In this document: positions 37,731 through 53,984 of the stretch, in pieces
Layout of the letters: every line of letters starts with the position of its first letter
How positions within the stretch are numbered: position 1 is the stretch's first letter
Virus record (IMG/VR): IMGVR_UViG_3300018080_000098
Location: 124,001 to 188,000 of that record
Strand: one strand, 5' to 3'
Length of the DNA stretch: 64,000 nt
Notes under the pieces: model-generated
Seen by the model: only the letters and a program-made list of their open reading frames with translations
Databases searched by the model: none
Told to the model about the DNA's origin: nothing
Program-made: the position numbers and the translations under genes

Positions 37731-38770
37731 TGTCTGAAGGACTCGCATCTATTACCGACGTATTCAGCTCGCTTTTCGTCTTGCTGAAACGTCGCGACGA
37801 TGGCACCTACGGGGCGCTGGCTATCACCGCTGCGCCCAGCCTTCACGGACCCGCTCTCCCATTCGATGCAGTAGAGCCCGGTGTGTACCGGTTCCATTGG
37901 ACTGCCGATGAAGCGAAGCAGGTTTCCATGGCGCTGCGTAAGCTGGGCTACATCACCTACTTTTTCAACTTTGAGCGCTTACAGGAACAATTCACGCCAC
38001 TACGTGAACTGACTCCTCTTGCGGGCGCACAGCCCACGTACCCACATCTAGCGGAGATTGCCGAATACCTTCCCGAATGCCAGATCTACGTAGAAGTGTT
38101 CGGAGGACGCACCCCACTTTTGATGGCGCGCACTCCAGCTCCCGTCGAAGTTTTCAACGATTACGCTCGAGCAGCCATCTCCTTTTTCCACGTTCTGCGA
38201 GACCCTGAGCTGTTCACTGATTTCTACCTCCTTGGGCGTGTTCTGCCACCGTCGCTGCAGCTCCCTGCGTTCCATCTGTTTTCCGCGTGGGAACTGCTCA
38301 GCGACAGCGATGCGGCCCTTGCATCTTACGCGTGGTACTGTTATGTTCGCCAGGCGTTCCCAGAGGTATCTGTACCAGAAGAACGGCAGGAAATACCAGA
38401 CGGCACACCAGCAAAGGTGATGGCAGCTCTCCACAGCGTAGACTACATGCTTCCGCGGATACACAACCGTTTGTACCGTGTGCAGATAGAGCACAATATC
38501 ATAGATGCAGTGCTCAAAATTTACGATTCGGACAAAACCCTCTTTTGGGTAGACCCTCCCCACGAAGGGGCAGGAGCACTCGACCTCGCAGGTACCTACG
38601 ATCTGCTGTCCCATCTGGATATGCAGGAAGGCTCTGTAGCCCTGTACGACAATCAGAATCCAAACATCCGACAGATGATGCGGATTAAAGATGGACCCTG
38701 GAAAAACTGGGAACCGGCGCAGTTCGGTCCCGCAACAGTGTACCTGAAACAGTGTACAACCGATGCCTGA
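37730..38770 (+). CDS. D12-class (Dam-like) DNA adenine methyltransferase homolog with altered motifs and N-terminal extension
   Basis: IYVEVFGG, VEVFND, VQIEH...IYDSDKTLFWVDPPH (canonical YxEPFxG and DPPY). Confidence 0.75.
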   Translation: MSEGLASITDVFSSLFVLLKRRDDGTYGALAITAAPSLHGPALPFDAVEPGVYRFHWTADEAKQVSMALRKLGYITYFFNFERLQEQFTPLRELTPLAGAQPTYPHLAEIAEYLPECQIYVEVFGGRTPLLMARTPAPVEVFNDYARAAISFFHVLRDPELFTDFYLLGRVLPPSLQLPAFHLFSAWELLSDSDAALASYAWYCYVRQAFPEVSVPEERQEIPDGTPAKVMAALHSVDYMLPRIHNRLYRVQIEHNIIDAVLKIYDSDKTLFWVDPPHEGAGALDLAGTYDLLSHLDMQEGSVALYDNQNPNIRQMMRIKDGPWKNWEPAQFGPATVYLKQCTTDA

Positions 38771-39038
38771 AAAGGAGAAAATCATGGCAGCCAAAAAGAA
38801 AAGTAAGAAGGTTCTCACCGAGCAGCAAATGAGGAAGGCCACTGGCGAGTTCTTCAAAACGTACGGCCCTAAAGTCATCACGGCTTCGCGTGTGAAAGAG
38901 TACTACGGTTCCCTCGGCCTCCGTGTCGACAGCACGTTGGCAGAGTCGCTCGCGCGGAAGTACACCGAGATGATGCTCAACGCAGCCCTTCGTTGCGTTG
39001 GCAACAAGCGTGGTACCGTGCGCCCGGTAGACCTGTAG
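38763..39038 (+). CDS. Bacterial-type histone-fold protein with Lys-rich N-terminal extension
   Basis: VITASRVKEY...LRVDS...LARKYTEMMLNAALRCVGNKRGTVRPVDL aligns by eye with the Bd0055-type histone fold, including the R-x-T-V-x-x-x-D L2/alpha3 signature. Confidence 0.85.
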   Translation: MPEKEKIMAAKKKSKKVLTEQQMRKATGEFFKTYGPKVITASRVKEYYGSLGLRVDSTLAESLARKYTEMMLNAALRCVGNKRGTVRPVDL

Positions 39039-39054
39039 GCCACAGCGAAGTAGT

Positions 39055-40131
39055 ATGCCAAAGTTTCTGCACACCGCAGACCTGCACCTCAACGCCCTCA
39101 GGCGCTTCAGCCAGTTCTACCTGGAGCGCGCTCAGGAGTGCCTTCGGTCGATTCACCAAATCGCCAAAGAGCACCACGTAGAGTTCATTGTGGTCGCAGG
39201 AGATATCTACGACCGACGTGATATCACCCACGCGGAAAGGTTACTCCTGTCGGAGTGGCTGGCTGATTGTGACATTCCCATTATCATGATTAGCGGTAAC
39301 CACGACAAGCGCTCCGCAGAAATTGGAGATACCTGCATCAGCTACCTCTCCACTTTCTCCCACCGCTTGGGTGACCACCACGTCTACGATGGACCTCCCT
39401 CCGTCTACGAGCGCTTCGGCTGCTACTTCGCCCTCTTCCCTTTCCAGGGATGGATGGATCAGGAGCTCTTCCTCATCCTACAAACCCTCATCGCAGACCA
39501 CTGCCCGAACCAGTCCCTCCCGGTCATCGTGGTCATGCACGAGGCTGTGTACGGTTGTAAAACGGATGTCGGAATGACTATTACCAAGTCAAACCAAATC
39601 CGCCTCGACACCAGCTTTCCTCGAGTAACCTATTGGGCACTCGGGGATATGCACCTCCCACAACGTATCTCCGACTTCGCTCGTTACTCCGGGTCGCCAC
39701 ATCAAACCCGTTTCGATGAAGTCGAAGATAAGGGGGTGCTCATCGTTGATACCGACAACCCTGCATATCCGGAATTCGTTCCTGTTCCATCCATCCCCCT
39801 TCGTATCGTTACCGAGGAACCAGACCATTGGCCCTCTCCACAGGAAGCGCTTATCCAGTTTCGGCCCGATGGACCGTTCCCCGAACGTGCCCTGCCACTC
39901 AATGTGGAGTTTCACCCTAGCGTCGTCGCCCTCCACCACACCCAGGAACGAGACCGCAACGCCATCCGCGTAGGCATCTTCGAAGGACTCGACGCCGCAT
40001 TGCAGCGCGCCCGACTCCACGAAGACCTGTTCCCACTCGCGTGGCGCCTCGCCGTGAAATTAGCGAAAACAGCCGGAGTAGAAGTACCTCTACCCGATAG
40101 ATACCAGACCGAGGATACATCCGATGAGTGA
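39055..40131 (+). CDS. sbcD: SbcD/Mre11 nuclease
   Basis: LHTADLH, VAGDIYD, ISGNHD, MH, ALGDMH, YSGSP. Confidence 0.92.
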   Translation: MPKFLHTADLHLNALRRFSQFYLERAQECLRSIHQIAKEHHVEFIVVAGDIYDRRDITHAERLLLSEWLADCDIPIIMISGNHDKRSAEIGDTCISYLSTFSHRLGDHHVYDGPPSVYERFGCYFALFPFQGWMDQELFLILQTLIADHCPNQSLPVIVVMHEAVYGCKTDVGMTITKSNQIRLDTSFPRVTYWALGDMHLPQRISDFARYSGSPHQTRFDEVEDKGVLIVDTDNPAYPEFVPVPSIPLRIVTEEPDHWPSPQEALIQFRPDGPFPERALPLNVEFHPSVVALHHTQERDRNAIRVGIFEGLDAALQRARLHEDLFPLAWRLAVKLAKTAGVEVPLPDRYQTEDTSDE

Positions 40132-41278
40132 ACAGAACCTGCACCTGGCAGCAAAGTGGCGCCCCAAATCCTTCGACGAAGTCGTAGGCCAACAGGAAAT
40201 TGTGGACAGCCTCCGAGGGATGATCCTCAGCAAGAAAATCGACCCCGTTCTCATCTTCCACGGTCCCTACAGTACCGGCAAGACTACCCTCGCAAGACTC
40301 GTTGCCTACTATATCAACTGCCAGAAACCCAACGGCATCGAGCCCTGCAAAGAGTGCCCCAGCTGTAAACAGATGCAGCCCGTACTCCTCGGGCGCTCCC
40401 AACACCCCGATGTGACTGAGCTCAACATCGCACTGCACGGAGGCATCGACGAGTTCCGCCGCCTCTCCTCCATCGCACCACAAGCCCCCCGTTACAACTT
40501 CCGCGTCTTCATCCTGGACGAAGCTCACCAGACCACCGCTGCCGCTTTCCAAGCCGCTCAGAAGATGTTCGAGGACCCACCGCGCCGCACTCGCTACATT
40601 CTGTGTACCACCGAGTTCCAGAAGCTCCCCGCTACTATTCGTAGCCGATCAGCTATCTTCTCAACGCAACCACTCCCAACCGAGCTGGTAGCACGCCGCC
40701 TCTTTCACGTCGCCGCACAAGAAGGCTTCAAGCCCCCCAAGGAGCAGCTGAAGCAGCTCTGTCTCCAGATCGCCACCGTTAGCGATGGCCACCTGCGCGA
40801 CGCCCTCAATCTGCTGAGCACCGTTATCAACAACGCCAAGGCCACAAAAAGCAAAACATCCGACTGGCAGGAGCTACTCACTGAGGTAGTGAAACAATCT
40901 ACCGAGCTGCAAACTAGCGAAGTCATCCGTGCGTACATGAAAGCCGTAGTCACCAGAGATATACCAGCGGCCTTCTCAGCTCTGCGTCACGTGACAAACG
41001 ATGTGTACTTTACGCAGCAGGTTATCATCGCCTTCCAACAGATTTTCTACTTCTGGATTGACGAAGACCTCTGCGACCGCGGTAAGCTCTGGCTCATCAA
41101 AGGTGTCCCAAGGGTCCCCACACCATCCAACACTGTGGAGACCATCCCAGCCATCCTGGATGAGTATGTTGGCGCCCTGGAACGGCTCCGAACTTACGCC
41201 ACAGACCCTCTCGCTGTGCTCGAAGCAGCCACGCTCCGCGTGATGAAAATGATGCCACCCAAACCCCAGCGTAGCTAG
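40124..41278 (+). CDS. dnaX: Clamp loader, DnaX (gamma/tau)-like AAA+
   Basis: KWRPKSFDEVVGQ, GPYSTGKTTLAR, C...PCKECPSC, FILDEAH, TIRSR, GHLRDALNLL. Confidence 0.92.
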   Translation: MSEQNLHLAAKWRPKSFDEVVGQQEIVDSLRGMILSKKIDPVLIFHGPYSTGKTTLARLVAYYINCQKPNGIEPCKECPSCKQMQPVLLGRSQHPDVTELNIALHGGIDEFRRLSSIAPQAPRYNFRVFILDEAHQTTAAAFQAAQKMFEDPPRRTRYILCTTEFQKLPATIRSRSAIFSTQPLPTELVARRLFHVAAQEGFKPPKEQLKQLCLQIATVSDGHLRDALNLLSTVINNAKATKSKTSDWQELLTEVVKQSTELQTSEVIRAYMKAVVTRDIPAAFSALRHVTNDVYFTQQVIIAFQQIFYFWIDEDLCDRGKLWLIKGVPRVPTPSNTVETIPAILDEYVGALERLRTYATDPLAVLEAATLRVMKMMPPKPQRS

Positions 41279-41283
41279 CTACA

Positions 41284-43725
41284 ATGCCCCTCATCGAATA
41301 CGAATCCCTCGATTTCGAGAACGCCTACATCTACCGGAAGTGTAGCTTCCCCCTGGAAAATCAGGGGCTCGTGCTCGTCCGCGGCCTCAACGTCGACGAT
41401 GGCGGCTACCTGGGTGCTGGCAAGTCTTCTATCTTTGAGGTGTTTGCTTCCCTTCAGGTGGGAAGAGGCGGTAAAAGAGAGCGCCGCCAAGGCAACTTCC
41501 GCACCAACCTGGTGAACTCGTTCGTCGGGGAAGATATGGTAGCTTCCCTCAAGCTCCGCGTCGACGGCCATCCGTACGAAATACGACAGTACCAGCAGCA
41601 CCACCGTTTTCACAACAAAATACTGGTCATCGATCGCGTGACCGGACAGGACATCCGACCCCGCTCCAGTGGCCACTCTCCCTTCAAATGGGTGCGTGAT
41701 GAGTTTCTGCGTATCGATGAGACTACGTTCTTCAATCTCATCTATCTGGTGCAGGAGCTTAATAATGTGATGATCCACGGGAAGGAGTACGAGCGCCGCA
41801 ATCGCTTGACAGCGATGTTCGATTTGGATATCTACGATGAGCTCCGCGCACTAGCTAAACGGGCCCTCTCAATGCATACTACTTCCATGTCGGACTTCGA
41901 GGAAGTCCGCAGCGAGCTTAGAGAGGTAAAACAGAAAATCTTCGCCCTACCGGACTTGGTAGACCTCGAAGCGGAGTTCGAAACAGCGGAAGCCCTCCTG
42001 AACCATATGCAGGAGCAGCACGAAGAGGATACTCAGGAATACACGCAGGTAGCCGATCTCTGCTCAAAACTTCGGCAACGCTCCACAGGACGTCGGCAAA
42101 TCATGTCGAAGTTCAAAGGCAGCTCCCTGACAAACACGTTCGACCACCCCAAGGATATTACCATTCGCAACGTGAAAAGATGGAAGAGTCGCTATGATAA
42201 CTTCAGCGCTGACTACATGGCTGCCCAGACAGACCTCGAGAAGCTCGAGAAACGCGATGCCCTTCGTGCCCAACTATTGAAGCTGAGCGACCGTGATGCA
42301 GAAGAGATTCAGGACGACTTGACCGACACCAAGACGAAGCTCACCTATATGAATCAGGTCGAGCTCCCTCAATCGGAAGAACGTCAGAGCCTGCTCATCA
42401 AATTGCAGCGGTTGACGGAGCCCGTTACACCGCTGGAAGAGCTTGAGGATGAGTTGGAAGCTGAGCAAAAGGAAGAGACAGAACTCAAGCGTGACGTGAA
42501 GGACCTGGATGCCGAAGTGCGTGAAGCTGTATGCCCACACTGCAAGCGCCCCTTTGATATGACAGCTGAGGAGCTAGCGGAGAAGCGAGGACGCTTAGCT
42601 ACTGCGCGGGACAGACTGCAGGAGCTTACACGAACAATCCATAAGCTGAAGAAGGAAATCAAGGCCTCCCGCGACATCAAAAACATCCGTGGGCGACTCA
42701 AGGCGTTCGAGACGCAGCGCTCCCCCGAGGAAGTGACAGAAGATATTCGGGAGCTTTCAGGTAAAGAGCGCAGGCTCGCCTCCGAACTCGAGACGTCGCG
42801 CCAGCGTACCAGGATAGAAGCAGAACTGGAGACGATGCCCACCGCGAGCAAAGATGAGCTCATCGAAAAGTGCAGCAAGCTTCGTCGCAGTGTCGAACGC
42901 GCCAGGGAACGCCACGAGGTGGGGAAGTTCATTGTGGAGAAGTTGGAGGAGTTGAAAAACCTCCCCAAGGGAAGCTTGGACGAAGCACAAGGACTACTAC
43001 GAGAACTTCAAGGACGCATGACGAGGATGTCGTCGAAAATTTCACAGGCGAGCGCAGATGCAACACACCTGAAAGAGCGTGTCAACGAGCTGCGTCAGCT
43101 ACTTCGGCGGGAGACCACCCTGAAGCGCACGTTGGAAAAGCAGAAAGCAATCGTCTCCGAGATTACGTGCTTGGAAGCCCTGAACAAAGCGTTCGGCACC
43201 AACGGTATGAAACAAGACCGCTTCGCCACCATCCTATCCGATGCGGCTGAGCGTACAGTCCCTGCATACTCAGATATCCTGTGGCCAAACCGTAACGTTT
43301 CCCTAGACTTGTCCGGTGAAGATGGCTCCTCGCTCCAGTTTGCGCTGGGGCGCCAGTCGGGAAATGTGGCCACCAGAAGCAGTATGCTCTCTGGCGGCGA
43401 ACGCCATAAAGCAGGGCTCGCTTTCCTTTTCGGGCTGCGCGACCTCAAGGAGCTCTACACGGGCAGCCGGTCCAACGTTCTTATCGTGGACGAGCCCTTC
43501 GGAAACCTCGATCCTCTCGGAACCGAAGGACTCATTTCCATCTTCGCTCTGCTCAAACAGAAGTTCGGTTCCGTCTTCGTCATCAGTCACAGACCAGAAG
43601 TTCTGTCCCATCCAGTGTGGGACCAGACGTGGTGGGCCATTCGCGAAAACAACAACGCGACACTTTATTTGGAAGACCCACCAGCGCGGTACCATCAAAT
43701 TGCCAACAACCTTGTAAAACAATAA
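41284..43725 (+). CDS. sbcC: SbcC/Rad50 ATPase
   Basis: GAGKSS, Q-loop YLVQ, coiled coil with CPHC Zn hook, LSGGE, IVDEP, VISH. Confidence 0.92.
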   Translation: MPLIEYESLDFENAYIYRKCSFPLENQGLVLVRGLNVDDGGYLGAGKSSIFEVFASLQVGRGGKRERRQGNFRTNLVNSFVGEDMVASLKLRVDGHPYEIRQYQQHHRFHNKILVIDRVTGQDIRPRSSGHSPFKWVRDEFLRIDETTFFNLIYLVQELNNVMIHGKEYERRNRLTAMFDLDIYDELRALAKRALSMHTTSMSDFEEVRSELREVKQKIFALPDLVDLEAEFETAEALLNHMQEQHEEDTQEYTQVADLCSKLRQRSTGRRQIMSKFKGSSLTNTFDHPKDITIRNVKRWKSRYDNFSADYMAAQTDLEKLEKRDALRAQLLKLSDRDAEEIQDDLTDTKTKLTYMNQVELPQSEERQSLLIKLQRLTEPVTPLEELEDELEAEQKEETELKRDVKDLDAEVREAVCPHCKRPFDMTAEELAEKRGRLATARDRLQELTRTIHKLKKEIKASRDIKNIRGRLKAFETQRSPEEVTEDIRELSGKERRLASELETSRQRTRIEAELETMPTASKDELIEKCSKLRRSVERARERHEVGKFIVEKLEELKNLPKGSLDEAQGLLRELQGRMTRMSSKISQASADATHLKERVNELRQLLRRETTLKRTLEKQKAIVSEITCLEALNKAFGTNGMKQDRFATILSDAAERTVPAYSDILWPNRNVSLDLSGEDGSSLQFALGRQSGNVATRSSMLSGGERHKAGLAFLFGLRDLKELYTGSRSNVLIVDEPFGNLDPLGTEGLISIFALLKQKFGSVFVISHRPEVLSHPVWDQTWWAIRENNNATLYLEDPPARYHQIANNLVKQ

Positions 43726-43736
43726 TAGGTGGCTGT

Positions 43737-44249
43737 GTGCTTACTCGAGCTTTTGTTTCGTTATCCAAACAGTCACCCGATGAGGTGTTGGAGTGGCTGT
43801 GTGGCGTCCTGAACGCAGACTCCGTTGAAGTTCCCGGAGTTAGCGGTGATGAGGTAAGAATAATTGCCCGTAAGGGTGATGAGCAACAGCAGCCTCTTTG
43901 GGACGATAAAAAGCTTCTGGCAACGTTGGAACGTACTGCCAATACGCCTTTGGGCATGGCAGTTGTATGGCTACTGCTTTGTTTTCATGACGTTTATTAC
44001 GATACCGACATTTTGTTGCGAGATTACGTGAAGCATGTAAGTGGAGTCCAGTTAGAGCCAGTACCGTTCGAGTTATCGGATGGCCACCTCGTTACAGCTT
44101 GCAGTCCGTCTGTATGTACGAGTAAACCAGAAAATTCTGGCCAGGTGATTTTTCGGGTTGACAAAAACAGTATGCACGTGTTACTCCCTTTAAGCAGTTC
44201 TGAATTGAGAGACCTGCTTTTAGGGCGGCTTCGGAGGAACGGTTCATGA
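43737..44249 (+). CDS. Hypothetical protein
   Basis: GTG with AGGTGG SD, downstream of the CTTGTAAAAC element at 43711. Confidence 0.6.
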   Translation: MLTRAFVSLSKQSPDEVLEWLCGVLNADSVEVPGVSGDEVRIIARKGDEQQQPLWDDKKLLATLERTANTPLGMAVVWLLLCFHDVYYDTDILLRDYVKHVSGVQLEPVPFELSDGHLVTACSPSVCTSKPENSGQVIFRVDKNSMHVLLPLSSSELRDLLLGRLRRNGS

Positions 44250-45085: not shown

Positions 45086-45124
45086 AACCAGCAGCGTTCA
45101 CGCATTATTGGAGGAGATTAACAG

Positions 45125-46270
45125 ATGGCGAAGAAAGACGTTACGAAGGGACTCGACCCTGATCTGTTCGATGCGGGGCTCGACGATGACGAGTCTGATA
45201 AAGAAGAGATTACGGAGGAGGGTAGCTCCGAGGAGGAAGCTCCCTCTGAGGAGACCCCTTCCGTTGCTGAAGAGGCTCCTCCTACCGAGGAAGAGGCTTC
45301 CGAGGAAGCTGCAGCCGATGAGTCCAAAGATGAGGAGCAAAAAGACGACGTGCCGGAAGAGGCTGTTTCGGAAGAGAACGACCCGGAGTCTGAAGAGGCT
45401 ACTGAGGAGGGCACAGCCGACGAAAGTACGGAAAAGCATACAGAGGAGAACGATGGTGCTCCTGAGGAGGCCAGCAAGAAGGGTGATGGGGGAGGGGAGG
45501 ACGGTGGGGACCCTTCGAAGGAAGAGGAACCAATCGCTCCTGCGGACATAGATTCAATAGCGGCCACTTATGTGGTACAGCGCGGTTTCACAGATACGAA
45601 TGGAAAGACGTACCATCCTGGGGACGTCATTCCTATTCAGTGTCGCCACTGTGCTTTGTGGGAGCGAGAATGGTTGGGCAAAAAACGTTGTAGTCCTGGA
45701 CGTCGTTTGGACGAAGATACTGTGATGCATCCAGAGCGCTATTCTTGCGAGACCTTCTTTATTTGCAAGGAGAACGACCCGGAGCTCACTACGTTCCTCA
45801 ACATGTCGGTGCCTGAAATTCTGACCGTACGCGCAATGCTGCCTGGCATCAAGAAGATTCTGCGCGCGGCTGATTTTCTCGACAAGTGGGCGGAGCGTGA
45901 GGATTTCAAGGGTGATAAGGGGGAGGTGTTCACGAACGCCAAGGGTTTCGTGACAGTTTTTAGTAGCTTGGAGCAGCTACTCTTGGCGGAAGGATTCATG
46001 CGTGAGTACATCAAGGCAGCATCCAAGCGTGCTGCCTACACCAAGCGTCCCCCGCGCCCGAAGTTCGAGCCAGGTGATTGGATCGAGTGGAAGGATTTGA
46101 AGACAGGTGAGACGATAGAAGGCATCCTTCTTTCCAAGGGAGCTGGTAATATCCACTTCGCGGGTACCAAGGTACACGCAGGGCAGAAGTTCACGTTCAA
46201 GCTCAAGGAGTGGAAAAAGAAGTGCGAGCCCAAGATTACCCGGAAGACGTCTTCTCCTGATGTCGAGTAG
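45125..46270 (+). CDS. Protein with long acidic disordered N-terminus and Cys-rich core
   Basis: GGAGGAG SD; ~130 aa D/E/S/A-rich region; CRHC...C...C. Confidence 0.75.
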   Translation: MAKKDVTKGLDPDLFDAGLDDDESDKEEITEEGSSEEEAPSEETPSVAEEAPPTEEEASEEAAADESKDEEQKDDVPEEAVSEENDPESEEATEEGTADESTEKHTEENDGAPEEASKKGDGGGEDGGDPSKEEEPIAPADIDSIAATYVVQRGFTDTNGKTYHPGDVIPIQCRHCALWEREWLGKKRCSPGRRLDEDTVMHPERYSCETFFICKENDPELTTFLNMSVPEILTVRAMLPGIKKILRAADFLDKWAEREDFKGDKGEVFTNAKGFVTVFSSLEQLLLAEGFMREYIKAASKRAAYTKRPPRPKFEPGDWIEWKDLKTGETIEGILLSKGAGNIHFAGTKVHAGQKFTFKLKEWKKKCEPKITRKTSSPDVE

Positions 46271-46294
46271 ACCTGCAATCACGAGGAAATTACG

Positions 46295-47932
46295 ATGGAA
46301 CGAGACCTCAGTTATCTCGATACTCTAGAAGTCGATACACTCAAGGAAGCTATCCTTGTCCTCGAGGAGCTGGAGGAGACATCCGGCCCGAAAGCCCGCA
46401 AGCAGGTCATCGAAAAGCACAAGACCAACCCTGTACTTCAGGAGTTCTTCTTGCGTGCGTTGGGGACCGAGAAGTACTACGTTCGTTTCAAAGAGGAAAT
46501 CCTGTCCGCCGCCGAGAGCTATTCTCCTCTCGATTCGTACAAGAAATTTCTCTCCGCTCTCAATGCATTGTGCGAGCGTAGGGTTACGGGAGATGAAGCT
46601 CGAGAGAGAGTGACTACGTTCCTTTCTAAATGCCATCCCCGCCTTCGGAAGTGGTACCTGCGAGTGCTCGACCACGATCTGCGTATTGGTGTAGGCCGTA
46701 CCAGTATCAACAAAATATACGGGACTGGTTTCTGGTTCGGAGTGGAGGAGGACGAGTTTCACTATCATGGGTGCTGCCTTGCGAAAGACTACGAAAAAGT
46801 GGTCACGGAGGAGAAGCCCCTCACCTACCCGGTGGCCGTCGAGTTCAAGCTGGATGGCGAACGCGCTTTGGTGTACGTGTTTCCTGACAAGCGTGAGATC
46901 CAGGTGTACACCCGTGGGCTGCTTCGGAAGACCGAGGTGGAGGGTGTGGAAGCGCTCGTGGACCAGTTTATCCAGGTGACCGCGAAGCTGAACGAGCTGC
47001 GTGGGGAGCCTGAGAACACCCCGTTGTTTTTGGATGGGGAGTTCCTGGCCACGGTTTGGAATGACACCTCGAGTGTGGTGGGTAGCACGACGAACTTCGA
47101 TGCGGAGGAGTTCCTGGCGGACGTGAAGGTTCTCTTGTTCGACTGGGCTCCTGTCGAGGACTACATCAAAAAGAAGTTCGACGTTCCGTGGAAGCCCCGG
47201 AAGCAGTTGCTCATGCGGGCGGCTGGTGCCAAGGGTCCTTACGAGAAGGTAATGCAGGCGGCGGACAACATCTACGTGCTGGGTCATCGTATTGTACATA
47301 GTGAGGAGGAGCTCAACGCTTTTCATGCGTGGGCGTTGGATGGTGATTTTGAGGGGACGATGATCAAGGTGCTTGACGCGCCGCACGTTTTCCATCGGAG
47401 GCACAAGTACGTTCTGAAGCTGAAGCCTACGAAGGAGGAGACGGGTGTTATCGTGGGGGCTGTAGCGGGGGAGAAGCAGAACGCTGCAGCGTCTCCTCGA
47501 GACAAGGAAATCATTTGGAACGCGATGGTGGATGATTTCGAGGGGGCGGAGAATGACGGGTACTACTACCATTGCTACGTGGACAATCCTGAAGAGGTAG
47601 CGGAGCACTTGCGGACGTTGGTGAAGGATGATAGAGATCGTCGAATCACCACTCATATAGATGGTGCTGTTTCCTATCGTTACAGTGCTCGGTTGGGTGC
47701 GTTCGTGGTGAAGTTGGGTGAGGATGAGGTGAACATTGGTGGTGGGTACAAGTACAAGGCGGGGCAGGATGAGCGAATGGAGTTCTGGCAACGTCGCGAA
47801 GAGTTGGTCGGCGTTAAGATAGATGTGAAGCTACAAGGAGACAAGGTCAAAGTAGCGAAGGCCAGGTTTAACAGTTTCGTGAGGCTTCGTTGGGACCTGA
47901 CGGAACAGCAGAACAGCGAAGAAAGCGCATAG
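46295..47932 (+). CDS. ATP-dependent DNA ligase
   Basis: EFKLDGER (motif I KxDG), LDGEF, LFD, EGTMIK, KLKP, OB domain with GGG and RFNSFVRLRWD. Confidence 0.92.
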   Translation: MERDLSYLDTLEVDTLKEAILVLEELEETSGPKARKQVIEKHKTNPVLQEFFLRALGTEKYYVRFKEEILSAAESYSPLDSYKKFLSALNALCERRVTGDEARERVTTFLSKCHPRLRKWYLRVLDHDLRIGVGRTSINKIYGTGFWFGVEEDEFHYHGCCLAKDYEKVVTEEKPLTYPVAVEFKLDGERALVYVFPDKREIQVYTRGLLRKTEVEGVEALVDQFIQVTAKLNELRGEPENTPLFLDGEFLATVWNDTSSVVGSTTNFDAEEFLADVKVLLFDWAPVEDYIKKKFDVPWKPRKQLLMRAAGAKGPYEKVMQAADNIYVLGHRIVHSEEELNAFHAWALDGDFEGTMIKVLDAPHVFHRRHKYVLKLKPTKEETGVIVGAVAGEKQNAAASPRDKEIIWNAMVDDFEGAENDGYYYHCYVDNPEEVAEHLRTLVKDDRDRRITTHIDGAVSYRYSARLGAFVVKLGEDEVNIGGGYKYKAGQDERMEFWQRREELVGVKIDVKLQGDKVKVAKARFNSFVRLRWDLTEQQNSEESA

Positions 47933-47945
47933 AAGGAGGCAAATT

Positions 47946-48569
47946 ATGCCGAGGAAGAAAGCCCAGCAAGTAACATTGGTAGGAGTTCGCGGAGCCAAGC
48001 TGCCTGTCTCCGAGTGTCTGTTGGTAAGCGAGGACGCTGACAGCTACGTGGTACAGGCGGTCCGGAAGACACGCGGGCGTGCAGCGAACAAGCTCGCCAC
48101 GTACGTGCTGCCGAAGTCGATGGTGCAGTACTATTATTCGGAGGAGGACATCGAGGGTGACGTTGACGGTGTCCCCGTGGCGGCTGCGAAGGCTGCTCCT
48201 CGCGCGGCAGCCAAGAAACCCGCAGCGAAAAAGAAGGTGGCGAAGAAACCCGCAGCGAAAAAGAAGGTGGCGAAGAAGGCCGCTGCTCCGAAGAAGCGTG
48301 GTCGTCCGAAGGGCAGCAAGAACAAGCCCAAGGAAGGTGCTGCTGCTCCGAAGAAGCGTGGTCGGCCTAAGGGCTCGAAGAACAAGTCCAAGGAAGGTGC
48401 TGCTGCTCCGAAGAAGCGTGGTCGTCCGAAGGGCAGCAAGAACAAGCCCAAGGAAGGTGCTGCTGCTCCGAAGAAGCGTGGTCGGCCTAAGGGCTCGAAG
48501 AACAAGTCCAAGGATGCCGGTTCGGCCAAAGCGAATAAAGCTGCATCACTTTTCGATGAGAGCTTCTAG
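47946..48569 (+). CDS. Histone H1-like / HMGA-like DNA-binding protein with four AT-hooks
   Basis: AAKKPAAKKKVAKK repeats followed by 4 x PKKRGRPKGSKNK. Confidence 0.85.
   Translation: MPRKKAQQVTLVGVRGAKLPVSECLLVSEDADSYVVQAVRKTRGRAANKLATYVLPKSMVQYYYSEEDIEGDVDGVPVAAAKAAPRAAAKKPAAKKKVAKKPAAKKKVAKKAAAPKKRGRPKGSKNKPKEGAAAPKKRGRPKGSKNKSKEGAAAPKKRGRPKGSKNKPKEGAAAPKKRGRPKGSKNKSKDAGSAKANKAASLFDESF
48213..48513 (+). repeat. In-frame tandem repeats: 2 x 30 bp, then 4 x ~60 bp (ABAB, a 120-bp duplication)
   Basis: AAGAAACCCGCAGCGAAAAAGAAGGTGGCG at 48213 and 48243; the 60-nt lines starting 48301 and 48421 are identical. Confidence 0.95.
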
Positions 48570-48684
48570 TAGCTTAGCAGTGTAGCTACCCCTCCATTAC
48601 CCCTCAAAATTACCCCAATATTACCGTTGCGCCGACATTACGTCGGCCATCCTCTACGTCAATTTGCTGTATTGGGGAAGTCCC

Positions 48685-49539: not shown

Positions 49540-49710
49540 CCTACAATCTTTTCTCCCCCTCCGCCATTATCTTCCACCGTTTGAAGGTTAATATCTATAC
49601 GTAGTTGCGGCTCAAGCCACAAGGTTGCCTTCGTGTGTTCGTTGCTTCTTGTGCCTTGCCGTTCGGATTCTCACGGATAAACCCAGGTGGTTAAGTAGGA
49701 GAAACAACAG

Positions 49711-50496
49711 ATGTCGGATTACAAAAATGACATTGCTGCTCGACTCAGCGAGCGCCTGCAGCAGCGAGTAGCCAGCACACGCAGTGGGCGCTTCGACCTG
49801 AAGCTGGCTGACTACGCCATCACGAGCCCCCACGAGGCACGTGTTATGGTGGCTTTCACTTCGGAAATGGGGCAGCCGAAACGCTCCGAGCTCGACCAGT
49901 GGGTCACGTCGTCCTTCAACGGAAACGTGAGCCTCACACTCGAGACTCTGCGTCTGTACCCGGACCTCAACGTCGTTACTGCATTCGTGCGTAAGAACCG
50001 TCGGTATCGTCCGCTCGAGGACACCAAGAAGTACCGCATGGCTTCTGTAGGCAAGAACCAGTACATGGACGACGAGAAGGTCATCTGGGAAGTCATGAGC
50101 AACGGGGACGAGCGCTTCCTAGCCCGCGCTGAAAAGGACGACCTCGAGGAAATCATGCGCGTACGCCTCTCCCGCGAGCGCACTGCTTCCATGCATCACC
50201 GGTTGCGCCTGTCCGACATCGTGACCGCTGGTATCAATAGCCTCGAGTCCGGTGACCGCGTGTCCTTCTCTTATGAGGGCATCCTTCAGCAGGGCGAAGT
50301 GAGCAACGTCGGCAAGGATACAGTCACCATCAAGGCCAACGGTAAGTCTGTCACCGTGGACCGCCTCGCAGTGGTCGACGTGACCGAGAAGGCTCCGAAA
50401 GCTCAGGCTGAGCAGAAGCGGTTCTTGGAGGACTTCTTCACCCGCGCTTACGGTGACAAGGCGTTCGCCAAGGAACTCGTATCCAAGGGTGACTAG
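49711..50496 (+). CDS. Hypothetical, possibly head-associated protein
   Basis: 261-aa ORF with AGGAG SD; heads the motif-protein array. Confidence 0.75.
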   Translation: MSDYKNDIAARLSERLQQRVASTRSGRFDLKLADYAITSPHEARVMVAFTSEMGQPKRSELDQWVTSSFNGNVSLTLETLRLYPDLNVVTAFVRKNRRYRPLEDTKKYRMASVGKNQYMDDEKVIWEVMSNGDERFLARAEKDDLEEIMRVRLSRERTASMHHRLRLSDIVTAGINSLESGDRVSFSYEGILQQGEVSNVGKDTVTIKANGKSVTVDRLAVVDVTEKAPKAQAEQKRFLEDFFTRAYGDKAFAKELVSKGD

Positions 50497-50509
50497 AGGG
50501 AGACTTCTC

Positions 50510-50938
50510 ATGAGCGCCCCTTCGCACATCAAGTACAAAGGCGCTACGTATCGCCGTCGCTGCCGGGTGGCCGTATGGGAACCCTCTAAAGGTGAGAAGA
50601 ATTTCAGCGCAGCTTCTTTGCTGGAAGCTTTTCCAGACCTTTCCGAAGGGGTAGTCAACCAGCTTGCCGAAGATGCTAAAGGTGTCTACGGTAAGAACGC
50701 CTCAGCTTTCTTGGAAAAGGCCGATACCGCTATCGGCGGTTTCGGTGTAGAAGCTGTTCGTTCTGAAGGTGCGTGGGATTCCTACTACGGTGACGTCGTT
50801 GCCGAATATGTAAATACTGGCGATACGTACAACGCAACCCTTCTCCACGACATCGAAGATGATGAGATCTACTTGACGACATATGGAGATTGGGTTCAGG
50901 CCTGGGAATACGAGAAGGAAAAAGAGGACAATCAATGA
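50510..50938 (+). CDS. YxG-motif protein 1
   Basis: N-terminal HIKYKGATYRR. Confidence 0.75.
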   Translation: MSAPSHIKYKGATYRRRCRVAVWEPSKGEKNFSAASLLEAFPDLSEGVVNQLAEDAKGVYGKNASAFLEKADTAIGGFGVEAVRSEGAWDSYYGDVVAEYVNTGDTYNATLLHDIEDDEIYLTTYGDWVQAWEYEKEKEDNQ

Positions 50939-51645
50939 CCACTCCCAAGTACATCCGTGTAGCTGGGCAGCTTTACCGTCAGCGTGAAGAGGAAATTCCT
51001 GCGTTCGTCAAGCACGACGGCTGGATCTACAAGCTCGCACAGACGGGAGCAGAGAACGTCGCTGCTATCGACGCACTTACCAAGCTGTCAAACCTGGCGA
51101 AGAAAATGGCCGACAGCGTAAAGGACCAGCAGATCTCCAAATTGCTTCAACAGGCTTACGGAGAGCTCGGTGTCCTCGCTACCAAGCTGGCCAAAGGTGA
51201 CTTCGAGGCGAAGTCCGCTGCGTTGAAAAACTGGGAAGACCTCAAAAAGGGCCTTTCCCAGTTCGCCCAACAGCTCGAAAAAGCGCAGCTGTCCAAACTC
51301 AGCAGTGCACTCACCAAGATGCTACAGGACAGCGATACCGCCCTTTCCGAACTCCAGAAAGCCGAAGGACTCGGCGCCGAGTTCGGTACCCCGGGTGGCG
51401 TCACTCCTTCTGGTAAGCCCAGCGTCGATTGGGGAGAGCACGCGCCGAAGAAGGATGAGCCTCAGCCGCTGCACGCGTCTACCGTGCCGGGCTTTTTCAC
51501 ACACAAGGGTGAGCAGTACCGTCCTCTCCTCCCGATTACCAAGGAAGCCGTTGCCTGGGCGACGTCTACCGATCCGAACGTGATCGCGGAGCGAAAGACG
51601 TTCCCACCCCTCGTGGTGCACCTGCTCGCGTCCGGTGTAGCGTAG
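50935..51645 (+). CDS. YxG-motif protein 2 (3 copies)
   Basis: PKYIRVAGQLYRQ, PAFVKHDGWIYKL, PGFFTHKGEQYRP. Confidence 0.75.
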   Translation: MTTPKYIRVAGQLYRQREEEIPAFVKHDGWIYKLAQTGAENVAAIDALTKLSNLAKKMADSVKDQQISKLLQQAYGELGVLATKLAKGDFEAKSAALKNWEDLKKGLSQFAQQLEKAQLSKLSSALTKMLQDSDTALSELQKAEGLGAEFGTPGGVTPSGKPSVDWGEHAPKKDEPQPLHASTVPGFFTHKGEQYRPLLPITKEAVAWATSTDPNVIAERKTFPPLVVHLLASGVA

Positions 51646-51654
51646 GCCCAGGTC

Positions 51655-52458
51655 ATGGCCAAGCACGGCCCAGACTTCTACAACGTTACCATCACGGCTG
51701 TCCGCAACTACGAACCCGGTAAGGGACCGCCGAGGAAGGCACAGTTTTGGAACTTCTCCCAGGCTGTGCAATCCAACAGCGGGCCATCGGGAGCCCTCGC
51801 CGCGATGGTGGACAAGTTTTTCAGGTACTACCCCAACCATGCTGTCGTCCTCCCTGATGGAGAACGTGGTCAAAAAATTCTCACGTGTGAAAACCGTTCC
51901 GGGGTAGAGAGCTACTTGTCCGGAAGAACTACGCGTTCTCATGGCGACATAATGCTTGAGAGCGCAGATTCTACACTACTCATTAAGAAGATGCGCGCTC
52001 TCTCCGGAGAAACCCCTATAGGTCTCACGCCCAAGAGCGAAAAAGAGTACGACGACGCGCTGCAGGGTAACATGGAATCCTATAAGTGGTGGCAGGACCC
52101 AATCGTGCAGATGCCCGCCCCCATCTACGTTTTAGATAAAGCAGCCGAGTCCGAAGATGCTCCCGGTACCATTCGGTACAAAGGGCGCCTCTACAGACGG
52201 GCAGCTGCAACTTCTTTGGCAGACCTCCCGCCCGAGAAGGCTAAAGCACTTTTCTTTGGCATCATGGAGAAGGTGACAGAAGGGATAACCACCGTTCATC
52301 AGCTCCTCGTGGACGCTGGGGAACAGCTGCAAACGGAAGAGGGAGACGCTACTCCTCTCCTCGCAGATGCTGCCAAACGAACATACAAAGAAGTACTCCC
52401 GCTCATCCTGGACGCTCGAGATATCGCGCATTCTTTAAAGGAGCTTCCCAGTGAGTAG
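51655..52458 (+). CDS. YxG-motif protein 3 (internal copy)
   Basis: PGTIRYKGRLYRR. Confidence 0.75.
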   Translation: MAKHGPDFYNVTITAVRNYEPGKGPPRKAQFWNFSQAVQSNSGPSGALAAMVDKFFRYYPNHAVVLPDGERGQKILTCENRSGVESYLSGRTTRSHGDIMLESADSTLLIKKMRALSGETPIGLTPKSEKEYDDALQGNMESYKWWQDPIVQMPAPIYVLDKAAESEDAPGTIRYKGRLYRRAAATSLADLPPEKAKALFFGIMEKVTEGITTVHQLLVDAGEQLQTEEGDATPLLADAAKRTYKEVLPLILDARDIAHSLKELPSE

Positions 52459-52960
52459 GCAGCTCCTCAGATACCGCGGCGTCCTCTACAAAAGAGTAGA
52501 GGCCACCCAACATCCGGTCAGCGGAGATGAGTTGAAGTCGTTGGCCACGGAGCTTGAGGTTGCACAAACTCATCTTGCAGAAGTGATCGCAGACGCTGAA
52601 AAAGTCACCAACGATGCGAAGAAGCTTCAAAAATCTCTCGCTACCGGAGCTCACGAGGTGCTACGGTCTCTTCGTAGTGACGGAGAGGTAGACCCCAGCG
52701 AGGTTCGGTTGCTCACTCCGGAAGGACGGCAAGAAGGGTATATGAATCCTCTCCGTTCCATGGAGAAGGCCAACCGGATGCTCAACTACACCGTGGACGC
52801 TGCCATCGCTGCTATCAAGACCAGCATCGAGCAGGTCGATACGATGGTAGATGAGTGGCACGCCGCTCTCGATGAAATGAATTCACCTAACACGTCCCGC
52901 GAGCTCACCGCTCCCATGGTGATGACTGATAGTCCCGCGGACGACGTGCCAACGCTTTGA
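52451..52960 (+). CDS. YxG-motif protein 4
   Basis: N-terminal LLRYRGVLYKR. Confidence 0.7.
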   Translation: MSRQLLRYRGVLYKRVEATQHPVSGDELKSLATELEVAQTHLAEVIADAEKVTNDAKKLQKSLATGAHEVLRSLRSDGEVDPSEVRLLTPEGRQEGYMNPLRSMEKANRMLNYTVDAAIAAIKTSIEQVDTMVDEWHAALDEMNSPNTSRELTAPMVMTDSPADDVPTL

Positions 52961-52968
52961 GGTTGCCT

Positions 52969-53427
52969 ATGCGCCCTACTAGAACACTCACAGATCCACT
53001 CAACATGGACCTCGAGGCCCGCCTGCGCCAGCGGTTCGCAGAGTTCCCTCGACAGGCTGCAGAACCAGAGCTCGAGGCAACAGAAGGGGACCCGGTTCCA
53101 GTAGAGCAGCCTCTTCCAGTAGCAGAAGATGGCATTTCTTCCGAAGAGCTCGCCATCCAACAGCTTCGCCCACTCTACGAGAACCTGTTGCGCGCTCGTC
53201 GTCAGCTGAACAGCCTCTCTGGAGAGCTCACTCGAAGGAAGCTCACCGATTCCCAGTTCAAAGATCTAGGCATCGTAGAAGACTGGCTCGGTGTCACCAA
53301 GAGCATCGCACGCCAGTACGGCGAAGCGCTCATTCAGATGGAACAGATTCTCGAGCAGCTCATTGAAGGCGTCATCGCGTATCGAGCCAAGTTCAACAAG
53401 GATCCCAGTTTCCTCGAAGGCGAGTAG
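52969..53427 (+). CDS. Hypothetical helical protein
   Basis: In-operon ORF; start uncertain; no motif copy. Confidence 0.65.
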   Translation: MRPTRTLTDPLNMDLEARLRQRFAEFPRQAAEPELEATEGDPVPVEQPLPVAEDGISSEELAIQQLRPLYENLLRARRQLNSLSGELTRRKLTDSQFKDLGIVEDWLGVTKSIARQYGEALIQMEQILEQLIEGVIAYRAKFNKDPSFLEGE

Positions 53428-53431
53428 CACC

Positions 53432-53749
53432 ATGGACGTTGGGTTTCGTAACGGACAGGGTTACTACGATCGCGAGCAGCGTCGCACCGATTGGATCACA
53501 GCCTACGACAAAGATACCCTCGAAAAAGTAGGCACCGTCCTGTTCCGCGTTCACGGAAACAAATGCTACGTGCAAGACGTTTTCGTGTTCCCAAATTTTC
53601 GTAGACAAGGATTCGCTACTCGCCTTGTACAAGCGATGATCTCCAACACCAAGCTCCCCTACCAACAACTTCGGTGGGGAATCAAATCGGATGATGGAGT
53701 GGCATTGAAACGAGCTCTAGACCGCCGATTCGGGAAAGGAGACCAATGA
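53432..53749 (+). CDS. GNAT-family acetyltransferase
   Basis: YVQDVFVFPNFRRQGFATRLV contains the acetyl-CoA-binding motif A (RxxGxA). Confidence 0.8.
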   Translation: MDVGFRNGQGYYDREQRRTDWITAYDKDTLEKVGTVLFRVHGNKCYVQDVFVFPNFRRQGFATRLVQAMISNTKLPYQQLRWGIKSDDGVALKRALDRRFGKGDQ

Positions 53750-53976: not shown

Positions 53977-53984
53977 AGGTCGTT

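What the first reader, a model, noticed from the sequence alone, without database searches (positions are those of the whole stretch)
38763..53749. Candidate phage chromatin system: core histone, linker/HMGA-like protein and possible modifiers
Inference joining separately seen genes: a tailed histone, an H1/HMGA-like protein, an atypical DNA MTase beside the histone, and a GNAT acetyltransferase (53432..53749). Together they echo a eukaryote-like core, linker and modifier layout. This could protect or compact a large genome without the ChmA shell or PhuZ, neither of which is seen in this window. The GNAT link is the weakest.
Basis: inference. Interest (0 to 1): 0.75.

Follow-up and report, generated by a model that had tools for sequence, protein, structure and literature searches.

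The report
Phage bacterial-type histone plus HMGA-like protein
An uncultured 350-kb phage carries, inside its DNA replication and recombination genes, a bacterial-type histone and an AT-hook (HMGA-like) DNA-binding protein that are inherited together across its relatives. The proposed "modifier" enzymes do not travel with them, so this is not a eukaryote-like chromatin system.

Summary
All four genes exist. The "core histone" (true start 38784, 84 aa) is not eukaryote-like. It is an alpha3-truncated, face-to-face (FtF) bacterial-type histone. Its closest solved relative is Leptospira HLp. The HLp tetramer residues are kept, and a homotetramer is predicted. Tailed FtF histones in tailed phages are already described (Liu et al. 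2025).

The "H1/HMGA-like" protein (47946-48569) has a five-strand Sm-like barrel, a Lys/Ala/Pro stretch, four canonical AT-hooks and an acidic tail ending in Phe. In this genome, only the phage RecA shares that tail.

Both genes hold fixed places in a collinear block: sigma factor, RecA, (D12), histone, SbcD, DnaX-like, SbcC, three unknowns, ligase, HMGA-like. They co-occur in every relative where both positions are covered.

The D12 methyltransferase-like gene is missing from three histone-bearing lineages, and its catalytic motif decays. The GNAT is missing from at least one relative that has both DNA-binding proteins.

Best reading: two architectural DNA-binding proteins of the phage replication/recombination module, with no dedicated modifiers. 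No tubulin was found and no phiKZ shell homologue was detected in the whole genome. Two relatives fuse an HNH nuclease in frame to the histone. The function has not been tested.

The parts
38784..39038 (+). Face-to-face (alpha3-truncated) bacterial-type histone, 84 aa. It has a Lys-rich N-tail of about 12 aa, an extra helix alpha0, then alpha1-L1-alpha2-L2 and a one-turn alpha3 carrying the RxTxxxxD motif. There is a single copy in the genome.
   Evidence: Start codon and SD. HLp match. Model and Foldseek. Predicted tetramer ipSAE 0.72 against control 0.00. Single copy.
47946..48569 (+). HMGA-like protein, 207 aa. Sm-like five-strand barrel (about nt 47946-48161), Lys/Ala/Pro repeats (48213-48277), four AT-hooks as a 60/120-bp tandem array (48282-48514), and a C-terminal SLFDESF tail (48546-48566).
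   Evidence: PF02178 hits the L033 orthologue at 1.4e-11.
37730..38770 (+). D12-class (Dam-like) DNA methyltransferase homologue with an extra N-terminal domain of about 85 aa. Motif IV reads DPPH here. It sits next to the histone but is not retained in all histone-bearing relatives.
36453..37730 (+). RecA-like recombinase. Its C-terminus (VSFDESF) carries the same terminal FDESF as the HMGA-like protein.
   Evidence: PF00154 at 2.5e-28. These are the only two ORFs in 350 kb with this ending. Tail partly conserved in orthologues.
39055..40131 (+). SbcD/Mre11-type nuclease. The histone gene lies directly upstream of it in every histone-bearing relative.
40124..41278 (+). DnaX (gamma/tau)-like clamp-loader ATPase.
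   Evidence: TIGR02397 at 5.9e-65.
41284..43725 (+). SbcC/Rad50-like ATPase.
46295..47932 (+). ATP-dependent DNA ligase. The HMGA-like gene always follows it.
   Evidence: phrog_114 at 5.6e-59. Synteny.
33233..34678 (+). Phage RpoD-like sigma factor at the head of the collinear block.
53432..53749 (+). Minimal GNAT acetyltransferase, 105 aa. It was evaluated and judged probably not part of the histone/HMGA pair.

Best explanation
The window is from a complete 350-kb jumbo phage with direct terminal repeats. The lineage is uncultured and comes from sediment and seawater metagenomes. Its replication/recombination block contains two architectural DNA-binding proteins.

(1) An FtF-type histone. 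By homology with HLp, it should form a homodimer by the histone handshake, and then a tetramer through R77/N81/R83 (numbered in the 91-aa frame). It should bind the DNA backbone without sequence preference and bend or wrap some tens of base pairs. The short Lys tail would add charge.

(2) An HMGA-like protein. Its 2-6 AT-hooks should insert into AT-rich minor grooves. Its Sm-like barrel may oligomerise. Its acidic, Phe-ended tail is shared with the phage RecA, so it probably docks on the same partner in the replication/recombination machinery.

Shown here: the identity of the folds and motifs, the predicted tetramer, the fixed gene positions, and the co-inheritance.

Inferred: both proteins act on replicating and recombining phage DNA. 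They would organise, bend and condense it, and assist SbcCD/RecA/ligase transactions and later packaging. They would not form a regulated, eukaryote-style chromatin. The D12-like protein and the GNAT are not dedicated modifiers of this pair.
For: Histone identity: PDB profile hits HLp 1.4e-21, HTkC 7e-13 and HBb 5e-10. Foldseek ranks HLp first at TM 0.90. The HLp tetramer trio R49/N53/R55, the RD clamp and the A-S-K DNA-contact motif map to R77/N81/R83, R83-D90 and A41-S42-R43. The four-copy prediction scores 0.72 against 0.00 for controls, with dimer-dimer contacts at 76-77, 80-81, 83 and 89-90.

Context: the order RecA-(D12)-histone-SbcD-DnaX-SbcC-...-ligase-HMGA-like is collinear in relatives with histone identity from 85% down to roughly 30-40%. 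The histone is always directly upstream of SbcD. Outgroup phages with SbcD at 32-38% identity lack it.

HMGA-like protein: a basic-repeat protein with an acidic, aromatic-rich C-terminus follows the ligase in every histone-bearing relative covered, although the repeat type changes (RGRP, PGRPKK, RKPGPKPK, KRGRKRK).

Shared tail: only RecA and this protein end in FDESF.

Fusions: HNH nuclease-histone in-frame fusions in two relatives tie the histone domain to DNA processing.
Against: There is no expression, binding or localisation data. No RNA run could be listed. The co-inheritance is within one vertically evolving, collinear clade, so it does not prove a functional link. In one unrelated mobile-element contig, a tailed histone has no AT-hook neighbour. 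The partner of the FDESF tail is unknown: no beta-clamp (PF00712) or bacterial SSB (PF00436) was found in the genome. The tetramer prediction may reflect the model's memory of HLp-like structures (warning). The Sm-like assignment is generic, with Z about 7.5.
Confidence: 0.5

Rival explanations
1. This would be a eukaryote-like chromatin system in which the histone is the core, the AT-hook protein is the linker, and the D12 MTase and the GNAT act as writers that modify them or mark the chromatin.
For: All four genes exist. The histone has a Lys-rich tail. The D12-like gene abuts the histone in most relatives.
Against: The histone is bacterial FtF-type, not a core histone. The second protein has no H1 globular domain. 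The D12 family methylates DNA adenine, its motif IV is not conserved, and the gene is absent in L034-L036, which keep the histone. The GNAT is missing at the syntenic site in G001, and no match over the PF00583 cut-off was found in the other histone-bearing contigs. The tail lysines are not conserved. Liu et al. found no significant association between histones and chromatin-related proteins in Caudoviricetes.
Confidence: 0.06
2. Host takeover. The histone and/or the AT-hook protein would be made early to coat, compact or silence the host nucleoid. They might also compete with a host FtF histone, if the host belongs to a histone-bearing phylum such as Planctomycetota, Myxococcota, Bdellovibrionota or Spirochaetota.
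For: The nearest non-phage look-alikes come from Planctomycetota and Myxococcota. FtF histones are major, even essential, chromatin proteins in such bacteria. HLp reorganises the E. coli nucleoid when expressed there (abstract). The phage brings its own sigma factor, which fits a redirection of transcription.
Against: The gene sits in the replication/recombination block, not among typical small early host-shutoff genes. It is conserved about as well as RecA, SbcD and the ligase. HNH fusions and SbcD adjacency point to phage DNA processing. The host is unknown.
Confidence: 0.15
3. Virion cargo. One or both proteins would be packaged with the 350-kb genome to neutralise charge and condense the DNA in the capsid. 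They would then protect the DNA from restriction or CRISPR at entry. This would resemble the histones packaged by some giant viruses, or phage internal proteins.
For: The genome is large, and no shell or tubulin genes were found. Both proteins are small and very basic. The analogy to giant-virus nucleosomes rests on my own knowledge and on the introduction of Liu et al..
Against: The genes are not in a structural module. There is no proteomic data. Phage capsids generally pack DNA too densely for wrapped histone tetramers (general knowledge).
Confidence: 0.12
4. Transcription cofactor. The AT-hook protein would work like Myxococcus CarD, which combines a small beta-barrel with an HMGA-like tail. 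It would help the phage sigma factor at AT-rich promoters. The histone would be an unrelated or only loosely linked DNA-bending factor.
For: CarD has a five-strand Tudor-like barrel and four RGRP hooks. The phage has an RpoD-like sigma factor in the same block. The genome has only 11 strongly AT-rich islands, and one lies just upstream of the sigma gene.
Against: No CarD_TRCF signature was found in Pfam, even at E 10. The best structural neighbours are Hfq/Sm and RimP-C, not CarD. The C-terminal tail is shared with RecA, not with a transcription protein. The gene always follows the ligase.
Confidence: 0.12

Closest known systems
HLp of Leptospira perolatii (bacterial face-to-face histone, PDB 9QT0-9QT2; Hu et al. 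2025, PMC12701072)
   Same: Same alpha3-truncated histone fold (38% identity over 53 residues, rmsd 0.6 A). Same RxTxxxxD/RD clamp. Same tetramer residues R49/N53/R55. Same A-S-K 'paired ends of helices' DNA contacts.
   Different: This one is phage-encoded. It adds a Lys-rich tail and an extra N-terminal helix (alpha0) that packs on the dimer in the model. Loop L1 differs (GLRVDS against GFMTSG). K21 of HLp is Gly here. Its genomic context is RecA/SbcCD rather than SMC.
[quoted passage not shown]
   Same: Phage-encoded FtF histones, predicted to be tetrameric, with a Lys-rich N-terminal tail of 5-40 aa. This is exactly the architecture seen here.
   Different: That survey reports no genomic context, no AT-hook or HMG partner, no SbcD/RecA linkage and no HNH fusion. 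Those terms do not occur in the paper. Whether this very protein is in their set could not be checked.
HBb/Bd0055 of Bdellovibrio bacteriovorus (bacterial dimer histone)
   Same: Truncated alpha3 and the RD clamp. Profile E 5e-10.
   Different: HBb is a dimer that bends DNA, and that family lacks the R/N tetramer residues. The phage protein keeps them.
'Phage histones' sensu Schwab et al. 2024 (A0A2E7QIQ9 type)
   Same: An alpha3 histone fold encoded by tailed phages.
   Different: Those lack the RxTxxxD motif and tetramerise through a long C-terminal helix. This protein has the motif and ends right after alpha3.
HMGA proteins and the HMGA-like domain of Myxococcus xanthus CarD
   Same: Several RGRP AT-hooks flanked by basic residues, plus an acidic C-terminal part. 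CarD also joins the hooks to a five-strand beta-barrel of about 70 aa. From memory, the hook RGRPKGSKNK matches the second hook of human HMGA1; I did not verify this with a tool.
   Different: There is no sequence membership in CarD_TRCF. The barrel looks Sm/Hfq-like. Here the acidic part follows the hooks, whereas in CarD it precedes them. The conserved Phe-ended tail is shared with RecA.
Linker histone H1
   Same: A Lys/Ala/Pro-rich disordered basic stretch (PAAKKKVAKK repeats).
   Different: No winged-helix globular domain. The folded part is all-beta.
D12-class N6-adenine DNA methyltransferases (Dam family, PF02086)
   Same: The fold, motif I (xVExxGG) and the following ND motif.
   Different: There is an extra N-terminal domain. 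Motif IV is DPPH here and loses the Pro-Pro-aromatic in distant orthologues. The window's own copy is not recognised by Pfam.
Acidic, aromatic-ended C-terminal tails of replisome proteins (T7 gp2.5 and gp4; bacterial SSB-Ct; RB69 polymerase clamp-binding tail). From memory only.
   Same: A short acidic tail ending in Phe, present on more than one protein of the same DNA-metabolism module.
   Different: No partner was identified here. No beta-clamp or SSB family match was found in the genome.

Membership tests
alpha3 / face-to-face (FtF) prokaryotic histones | Histone fold: alpha1-L1-alpha2-L2-alpha3 | tested here: met
   AF2 model with helices at 41-50 and 59-80 and a turn at 88-90. Foldseek ranks HLp, HTkC and HBb at the top.
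alpha3 / face-to-face (FtF) prokaryotic histones | alpha3 truncated to 3-4 residues, with the protein ending there | tested here: met
   The protein ends in ...RPVDL, and the model has a single turn at 88-90. The definition is given.
alpha3 / face-to-face (FtF) prokaryotic histones | RxTxxxxD motif (RD clamp) | tested here: met
   R83, T85 and D90 are invariant or nearly so in 66 homologues.
alpha3 / face-to-face (FtF) prokaryotic histones | Tetramer residues R49/N53/R55 (HLp numbering) and a dimer-dimer interface through the alpha2 C-terminus, L2 and alpha3 | tested here: met
   R77/N81/R83 are present. The predicted four-copy complex scores 0.72 against 0.00, with contacts at 76-77, 80-81, 83 and 89-90. 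This is a prediction, not a measurement.
alpha3 / face-to-face (FtF) prokaryotic histones | Non-specific DNA binding and wrapping | not testable with these tools
   Only the conservation of the HLp contact residues A-S-K and K17, and of T57, can be shown.
'Phage histones' of Schwab et al. 2024 | C-terminal tetramerisation helix and lack of the RxTxxxD motif | tested here: not met
   The motif is present and there is no C-terminal extension.
Eukaryotic core histones (PF00125) | Sequence membership and a full-length alpha3 | tested here: not met
   No Pfam hit for the window protein. Nucleosomal histones align only at TM about 0.45.
Linker histone H1/H5 | Winged-helix globular domain | tested here: not met
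   The N-terminal folded domain is five beta-strands at pLDDT 82. There is no Pfam hit.
HMGA (AT-hook) proteins | Three or more AT-hooks with an RGRP core and basic flanks | tested here: met
   Four KKRGRPKGSKNK units. PF02178 matches 4 of 10 family members weakly, and the L033 orthologue at 1.4e-11.
HMGA (AT-hook) proteins | Acidic C-terminal tail and a wholly disordered protein | tested here: inconclusive
   The tail is short here (FDESF) and long and acidic in L033-L036. The protein does have a folded N-terminal barrel.
CarD (CarD_CdnL_TRCF, PF02559) | RNAP-interacting Tudor-like domain recognisable by sequence | tested here: not met
   No PF02559 match even at E 10. CarD is not among the 50 best structural matches.
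D12-class N6-adenine DNA methyltransferase | Fold and the AdoMet-binding motif I | tested here: met
   Atlas features 0.93 and structure TM 0.62-0.72. A conserved YVExxGG motif, then ExxND. 3 of 6 orthologues hit PF02086.
D12-class N6-adenine DNA methyltransferase | Catalytic motif IV, DPPY/F/W | tested here: inconclusive
   DPPH in the window. DVPF and DPPF in close orthologues. DPAE, DPVE and DPED in distant ones. Activity was not tested.
GNAT acetyltransferases | Pfam membership and motif A (R/Q-x-x-G-x-A/G) | tested here: met
   PF00583 at 32.3 bits, above the 20.7 cut-off. RRQGFAT is present.
GNAT acetyltransferases | Acts on the histone or on the AT-hook protein | not testable with these tools
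   Co-occurrence argues against it. The gene is absent at the syntenic site in G001, and no match over the cut-off was found in G001 or G005-G008.
Nucleus-forming (chimalli-) jumbo phages | ChmA shell protein and PhuZ tubulin | tested here: not met
   No PF00091 match. No match to phiKZ gp54 at E 10. The latter is a weak test for a very divergent protein.

The most novel reading that the evidence does not exclude
A jumbo-phage clade with no detectable shell or tubulin genes would organise its replicating 350-kb genome with a minimal chromatin of its own. Face-to-face histone tetramers would wrap the DNA. A multivalent HMGA-like protein, possibly a ring of Sm-like barrels each carrying 2-6 AT-hooks, would cross-link them. 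That protein would be anchored to the recombination machinery through the FDESF tail it shares with RecA. In some relatives, the histone domain would also be reused to deliver an HNH nuclease to DNA.
Probability: 0.2. Interest if true: 0.8.

Novelty: new variant of a known kind. Interest (0 to 1): 0.5.

Why it matters
Phage-encoded bacterial-type histones are known only from a sequence survey. Nothing is known about when or where they act. This locus gives them a context: a fixed position directly upstream of SbcD in a replication/recombination block, a constant HMGA-like companion, and nuclease fusions in relatives. That turns "phages have histones" into testable hypotheses about DNA organisation during recombination-dependent replication of very large phage genomes. 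It also removes an attractive but unsupported idea, namely that of histone-modifying "writers" in phages.

Tried and rejected
Sequence-family searches on the named genes:
- Pfam, PHROGs and NCBIfam on the histone gave nothing. Only the PDB search and a family profile identified it.
- A PDB profile search for the D12-like protein gave only chance hits.
- The Atlas search on the conserved C-terminal part of the acidic protein 45125-46270 was uninformative.
- The PDB search with the AT-hook region hit only a low-complexity Lys/Ala stretch.
- CarD membership of the AT-hook protein was rejected.
- An H1-like globular domain was rejected.

Searches for relatives:
- Megablast of 14 kb against cultured phages found no match.
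- tblastn of the histone against cultured phages found no match, and RecA found only matches below 30% identity. The lineage therefore has no cultured relative.
- The search for related loci with the close histone alignment found nothing in viral or genome collections.
- With the wide histone alignment, that tool could not run.
- A back-translated motif search and an SbcD alignment succeeded instead.

Whole-genome searches for partner or hallmark genes:
- Beta-clamp, SSB, tubulin and phiKZ shell protein all gave no match.

Expression and regulation:
- No RNA-seq run could be listed, so expression could not be tested.
- The promoter/terminator scan of 32.5-50 kb was at chance level.

Ideas considered and rejected:
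- That the co-occurrence of the four genes in close relatives is evidence for a system. Those contigs are collinear throughout, so only the distant relatives are informative.


Full report
WHERE THE WINDOW LIES. The window is bases 124001-188000 of a single 349,793-bp virus record with direct terminal repeats, rated complete. Its G+C content is 54%. The DNA is held by sediment and seawater metagenome runs, and no RNA run could be listed. Cultured phages hold no near-identical DNA, no histone homologue, and only RecA matches below 30% identity. The lineage is therefore known only from metagenomes.

THE HISTONE.
- Start codon. The ORF 38763-39038 is real, but the start used is almost certainly the ATG at 38784. 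AAGGAG lies 8 nt upstream, and all orthologues begin with Met-Ala there. The product is 84 aa.
- Identification. Pfam, PHROGs and NCBIfam do not recognise it. A single-sequence search of solved structures finds one hit at E 1.3e-3, the bacterial histone HLp of Leptospira perolatii.
- Family. An exhaustive profile search found 102 representative relatives. A profile of 66 of them matches HLp at 1.4e-21, the archaeal face-to-face histone HTkC at 7e-13, and Bdellovibrio HBb at 5e-10.
- Model. The AlphaFold model (pLDDT 77) shows a disordered Lys-rich tail, an extra helix alpha0, then alpha1, alpha2 and a one-turn alpha3. It superposes on HLp with TM 0.90 and rmsd 0.6 A.
- Conserved residues. R77/N81/R83 correspond to the HLp tetramer trio R49/N53/R55. 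R83-D90 corresponds to the RD clamp. A41-S42-R43 and K45 correspond to HLp's DNA-contacting A13-S14-K15 and K17.
- Oligomer. A four-copy complex prediction scored 0.72 against 0.00 for controls. It showed a handshake dimer plus dimer-dimer contacts at 76-77, 80-81, 83 and 89-90. This supports, but does not show, an HLp-like tetramer.
- Copy number. The genome has only this one histone gene.

This architecture, an FtF histone with a Lys-rich tail of 5-40 aa in tailed phages, has already been described as 'viral face-to-face histones'. It is not the 'phage histone' type of Schwab et al., which lacks the motif and has a C-terminal helix. It is not a eukaryote-like core histone either.

THE AT-HOOK PROTEIN.
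- Repeats. 47946-48569 encodes 207 aa with four KKRGRPKGSKNK hooks. These are built from a 60-bp unit and a perfect 120-bp duplication, and they follow PAAKKKVAKK repeats.
- Folded domain. Homologues share a conserved N-terminal domain of about 72 aa, 2-5 hooks, and a conserved C-terminus (SLFDESF, SIFDEDF, ALFGDNF or ALFEEDF). The N-domain folds as a five-strand small barrel at pLDDT 82. Its best neighbours are Hfq/Sm, Gemin and RimP-C, at modest scores. It is not a winged helix, so 'H1-like' holds only for composition.
- CarD comparison. Pfam finds no CarD_TRCF signature. Even so, CarD of Myxococcus, which joins a five-strand barrel to four RGRP hooks, is the nearest known bacterial layout.
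- Shared tail. In the whole 350-kb genome, only two open frames end in ..FDESF: this protein and the RecA-like recombinase at 36453-37730. The RecA tail recurs in two of three orthologues. I read this as a shared docking peptide. No beta-clamp or SSB family member was found that could be its partner.

THE D12-LIKE GENE. 37730-38770 is a D12-class fold from residue 85 onwards. Three of six orthologues reach PF02086. Motif I and the following ND motif are conserved. Motif IV is not:
- DPPH in the window;
- DVPF and DPPF in close orthologues;
- DPAE, DPVE and DPED in distant ones.
It is a homologue of DNA methyltransferases, not protein methyltransferases, and part of the family may be inactive.

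THE GNAT. 53432-53749 is a genuine minimal GNAT and the only one in the genome. It sits 14 kb away, among genes of unknown function.

CO-OCCURRENCE. Close relatives are collinear throughout, so they say little. More distant relatives were reached through distant histone homologues, a back-translated motif and an SbcD alignment. In these:
- The histone lies directly upstream of SbcD in every member of a clade with SbcD identity of at least 41%. Outgroup phages at 32-38% lack it and carry other genes there.
- The gene after the ligase always encodes a small N-domain, basic minor-groove-type repeats and an acidic, aromatic-containing C-terminus. The repeat itself changes: six RGRP hooks in L033, PGRPKK five times in L034, RKPGPKPK in L035, and KRGRKRK plus a long acidic tail in L036.
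- The D12-like gene is absent between RecA and the histone in L034, L035 and L036.
- In the 260-kb relative G001, only 230 nt separate the two genes that flank the GNAT and its upstream neighbour in the window. No GNAT is found anywhere on that contig. PF00583 finds no match in three further histone-bearing contigs, and only one sub-threshold match in a fourth.

So the histone and the HMGA-like protein are co-inherited, and the two proposed modifiers are dispensable. All of this lies within one vertically evolving lineage. One tailed histone on an unrelated mobile-element contig has no AT-hook neighbour. Co-inheritance is therefore compatible with a functional link but does not prove one.

HNH FUSIONS. 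In L033 (and the identical L048) and in L035, an HNH endonuclease domain (PF01844, about 1e-7) runs in frame into the histone domain with no stop codon. An internal ATG with its own Shine-Dalgarno sequence precedes the histone part, so a long and a short form are both possible. The 305-aa frame recurs letter for letter in contigs of three separate sample accessions, so a sequencing error is unlikely. Neither survey of prokaryotic or viral histones mentions HNH.

HOW IT MOST LIKELY WORKS.
Shown: the folds, the motifs, the predicted tetramer, the gene order and the co-inheritance.
Inferred:
- The block looks like one long co-directional unit, with no internal promoter or terminator signal above chance.
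- The histone tetramer binds DNA non-specifically and bends or wraps it, as HLp does.
- The AT-hook protein binds AT-rich minor grooves and is tethered to the recombination machinery through the tail it shares with RecA.
- Together they organise replicating and recombining phage DNA.
The rival explanations (host-nucleoid takeover, virion cargo, and a CarD-like transcription cofactor) are not excluded. Each is given with its test in the Rival explanations section.

OTHER CHECKS. No tubulin was found in the whole genome. No phiKZ gp54 homologue was detected either, a test with limited sensitivity. The phage has its own RpoD-like sigma factor. In the source run, contigs break at the AT-hook repeat. 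The repeat unitigs have about 1.8 times the flank depth, which fits the four-hook form better than the two-hook form of the otherwise near-identical contig L004.

VERDICT. There is a real pair of a phage histone and an HMGA-like protein in a replication/recombination module. There is no support for a eukaryote-like layout or for modifiers. The histone itself is a new member of a described class. The conserved companion, the fixed SbcD-adjacent position, the RecA-shared tail and the HNH fusions are, as far as the searched literature shows, undescribed.

Noticed in passing
window 50453-55796 (ORFs 50510-50938+, 50935-51645+, 51655-52458+, 52451-52960+, 53985-54638+, 55127-55435-, 55440-55796-); also genome 260291-261688 and 290969-291271: A short motif [ILV][KR][YFV]xGxxY[RKE], for example IRYKGRLYR, IKVGGHLYRK or LRYRGVLYK, recurs in at least 9 ORFs. 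It is often at the very N-terminus and sometimes occurs twice. Seven of these ORFs cluster around the GNAT. None has a family match. It could be a targeting tag or a small beta-hairpin module.
   Followed up: partly
window 37710-37727 and 48546-48566: Only two open frames in the 350-kb genome end in ..FDESF: the RecA-like recombinase and the AT-hook protein. The tail is conserved in all close AT-hook orthologues and in two of three RecA orthologues. It looks like a shared docking peptide, but its partner is unknown.
   Followed up: partly
L033:9084-10001, L048:10001-10918, L035:5291-6058: An HNH endonuclease domain is fused in frame to the histone domain in two related phage lineages. An internal SD+ATG could also give a stand-alone histone. 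The same 305-aa frame is seen in contigs of three separate sample accessions.
   Followed up: partly
window 48282-48514; L004:10001-10474; L029:18648-19388: The number of AT-hooks varies between near-identical and related genomes: 4 here, 2 in L004, 5 in L029/L032 and 6 in L033. Here the array is a perfect 120-bp tandem duplication. Logan unitigs of the source run break there and have about 1.8 times the flank depth.
   Followed up: yes
window 37730-38770 and orthologues (alignment A3): Motif IV of the D12 methyltransferase-like gene drifts from DPPH/DPPF to DPAE, DPVE and DPED, while motif I stays conserved. The gene also carries an unexplained N-terminal domain of about 85 aa. Part of the family may be a non-catalytic DNA- or AdoMet-binding protein.
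   Followed up: partly
window 45125-46270: This 381-aa protein has an extremely acidic N-terminal stretch of about 130 residues (Glu/Asp/Ser-rich) and a conserved C-terminal domain of unknown fold. It lies between the SbcC and ligase genes in all relatives. A chaperone-like or DNA-mimic role for basic proteins is conceivable but untested.
   Followed up: partly
window 33119-33180 and 33233-34678: One of only 11 strongly AT-rich islands in the whole genome lies just upstream of a phage RpoD-like sigma factor gene. It contains a TTGACT ... TAATAC promoter-like pair, judged by eye. The simple scanner did not list this pair.
   Followed up: no
genome 246264-246605 (outside the window); L034:191-373: Further small ORFs combine an RGRP/GRPKK hook with an acidic C-terminus ending in, or right next to, an aromatic residue. 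This 'hook plus acidic tail' design may be used more than once in these phages.
   Followed up: no
whole genome: Several short palindromes are strongly under-represented (observed/expected: TATA 0.37, CTAG 0.42, TTAA 0.42, GGCC 0.47, CCGG 0.65, GATC 0.67). AGCT (1.83) and TCGA (1.56) are over-represented.
   Followed up: no
window 59381-59453 and 61043-61115: tRNA-Thr(TGT) and tRNA-Pro(TGG) genes.
   Followed up: no
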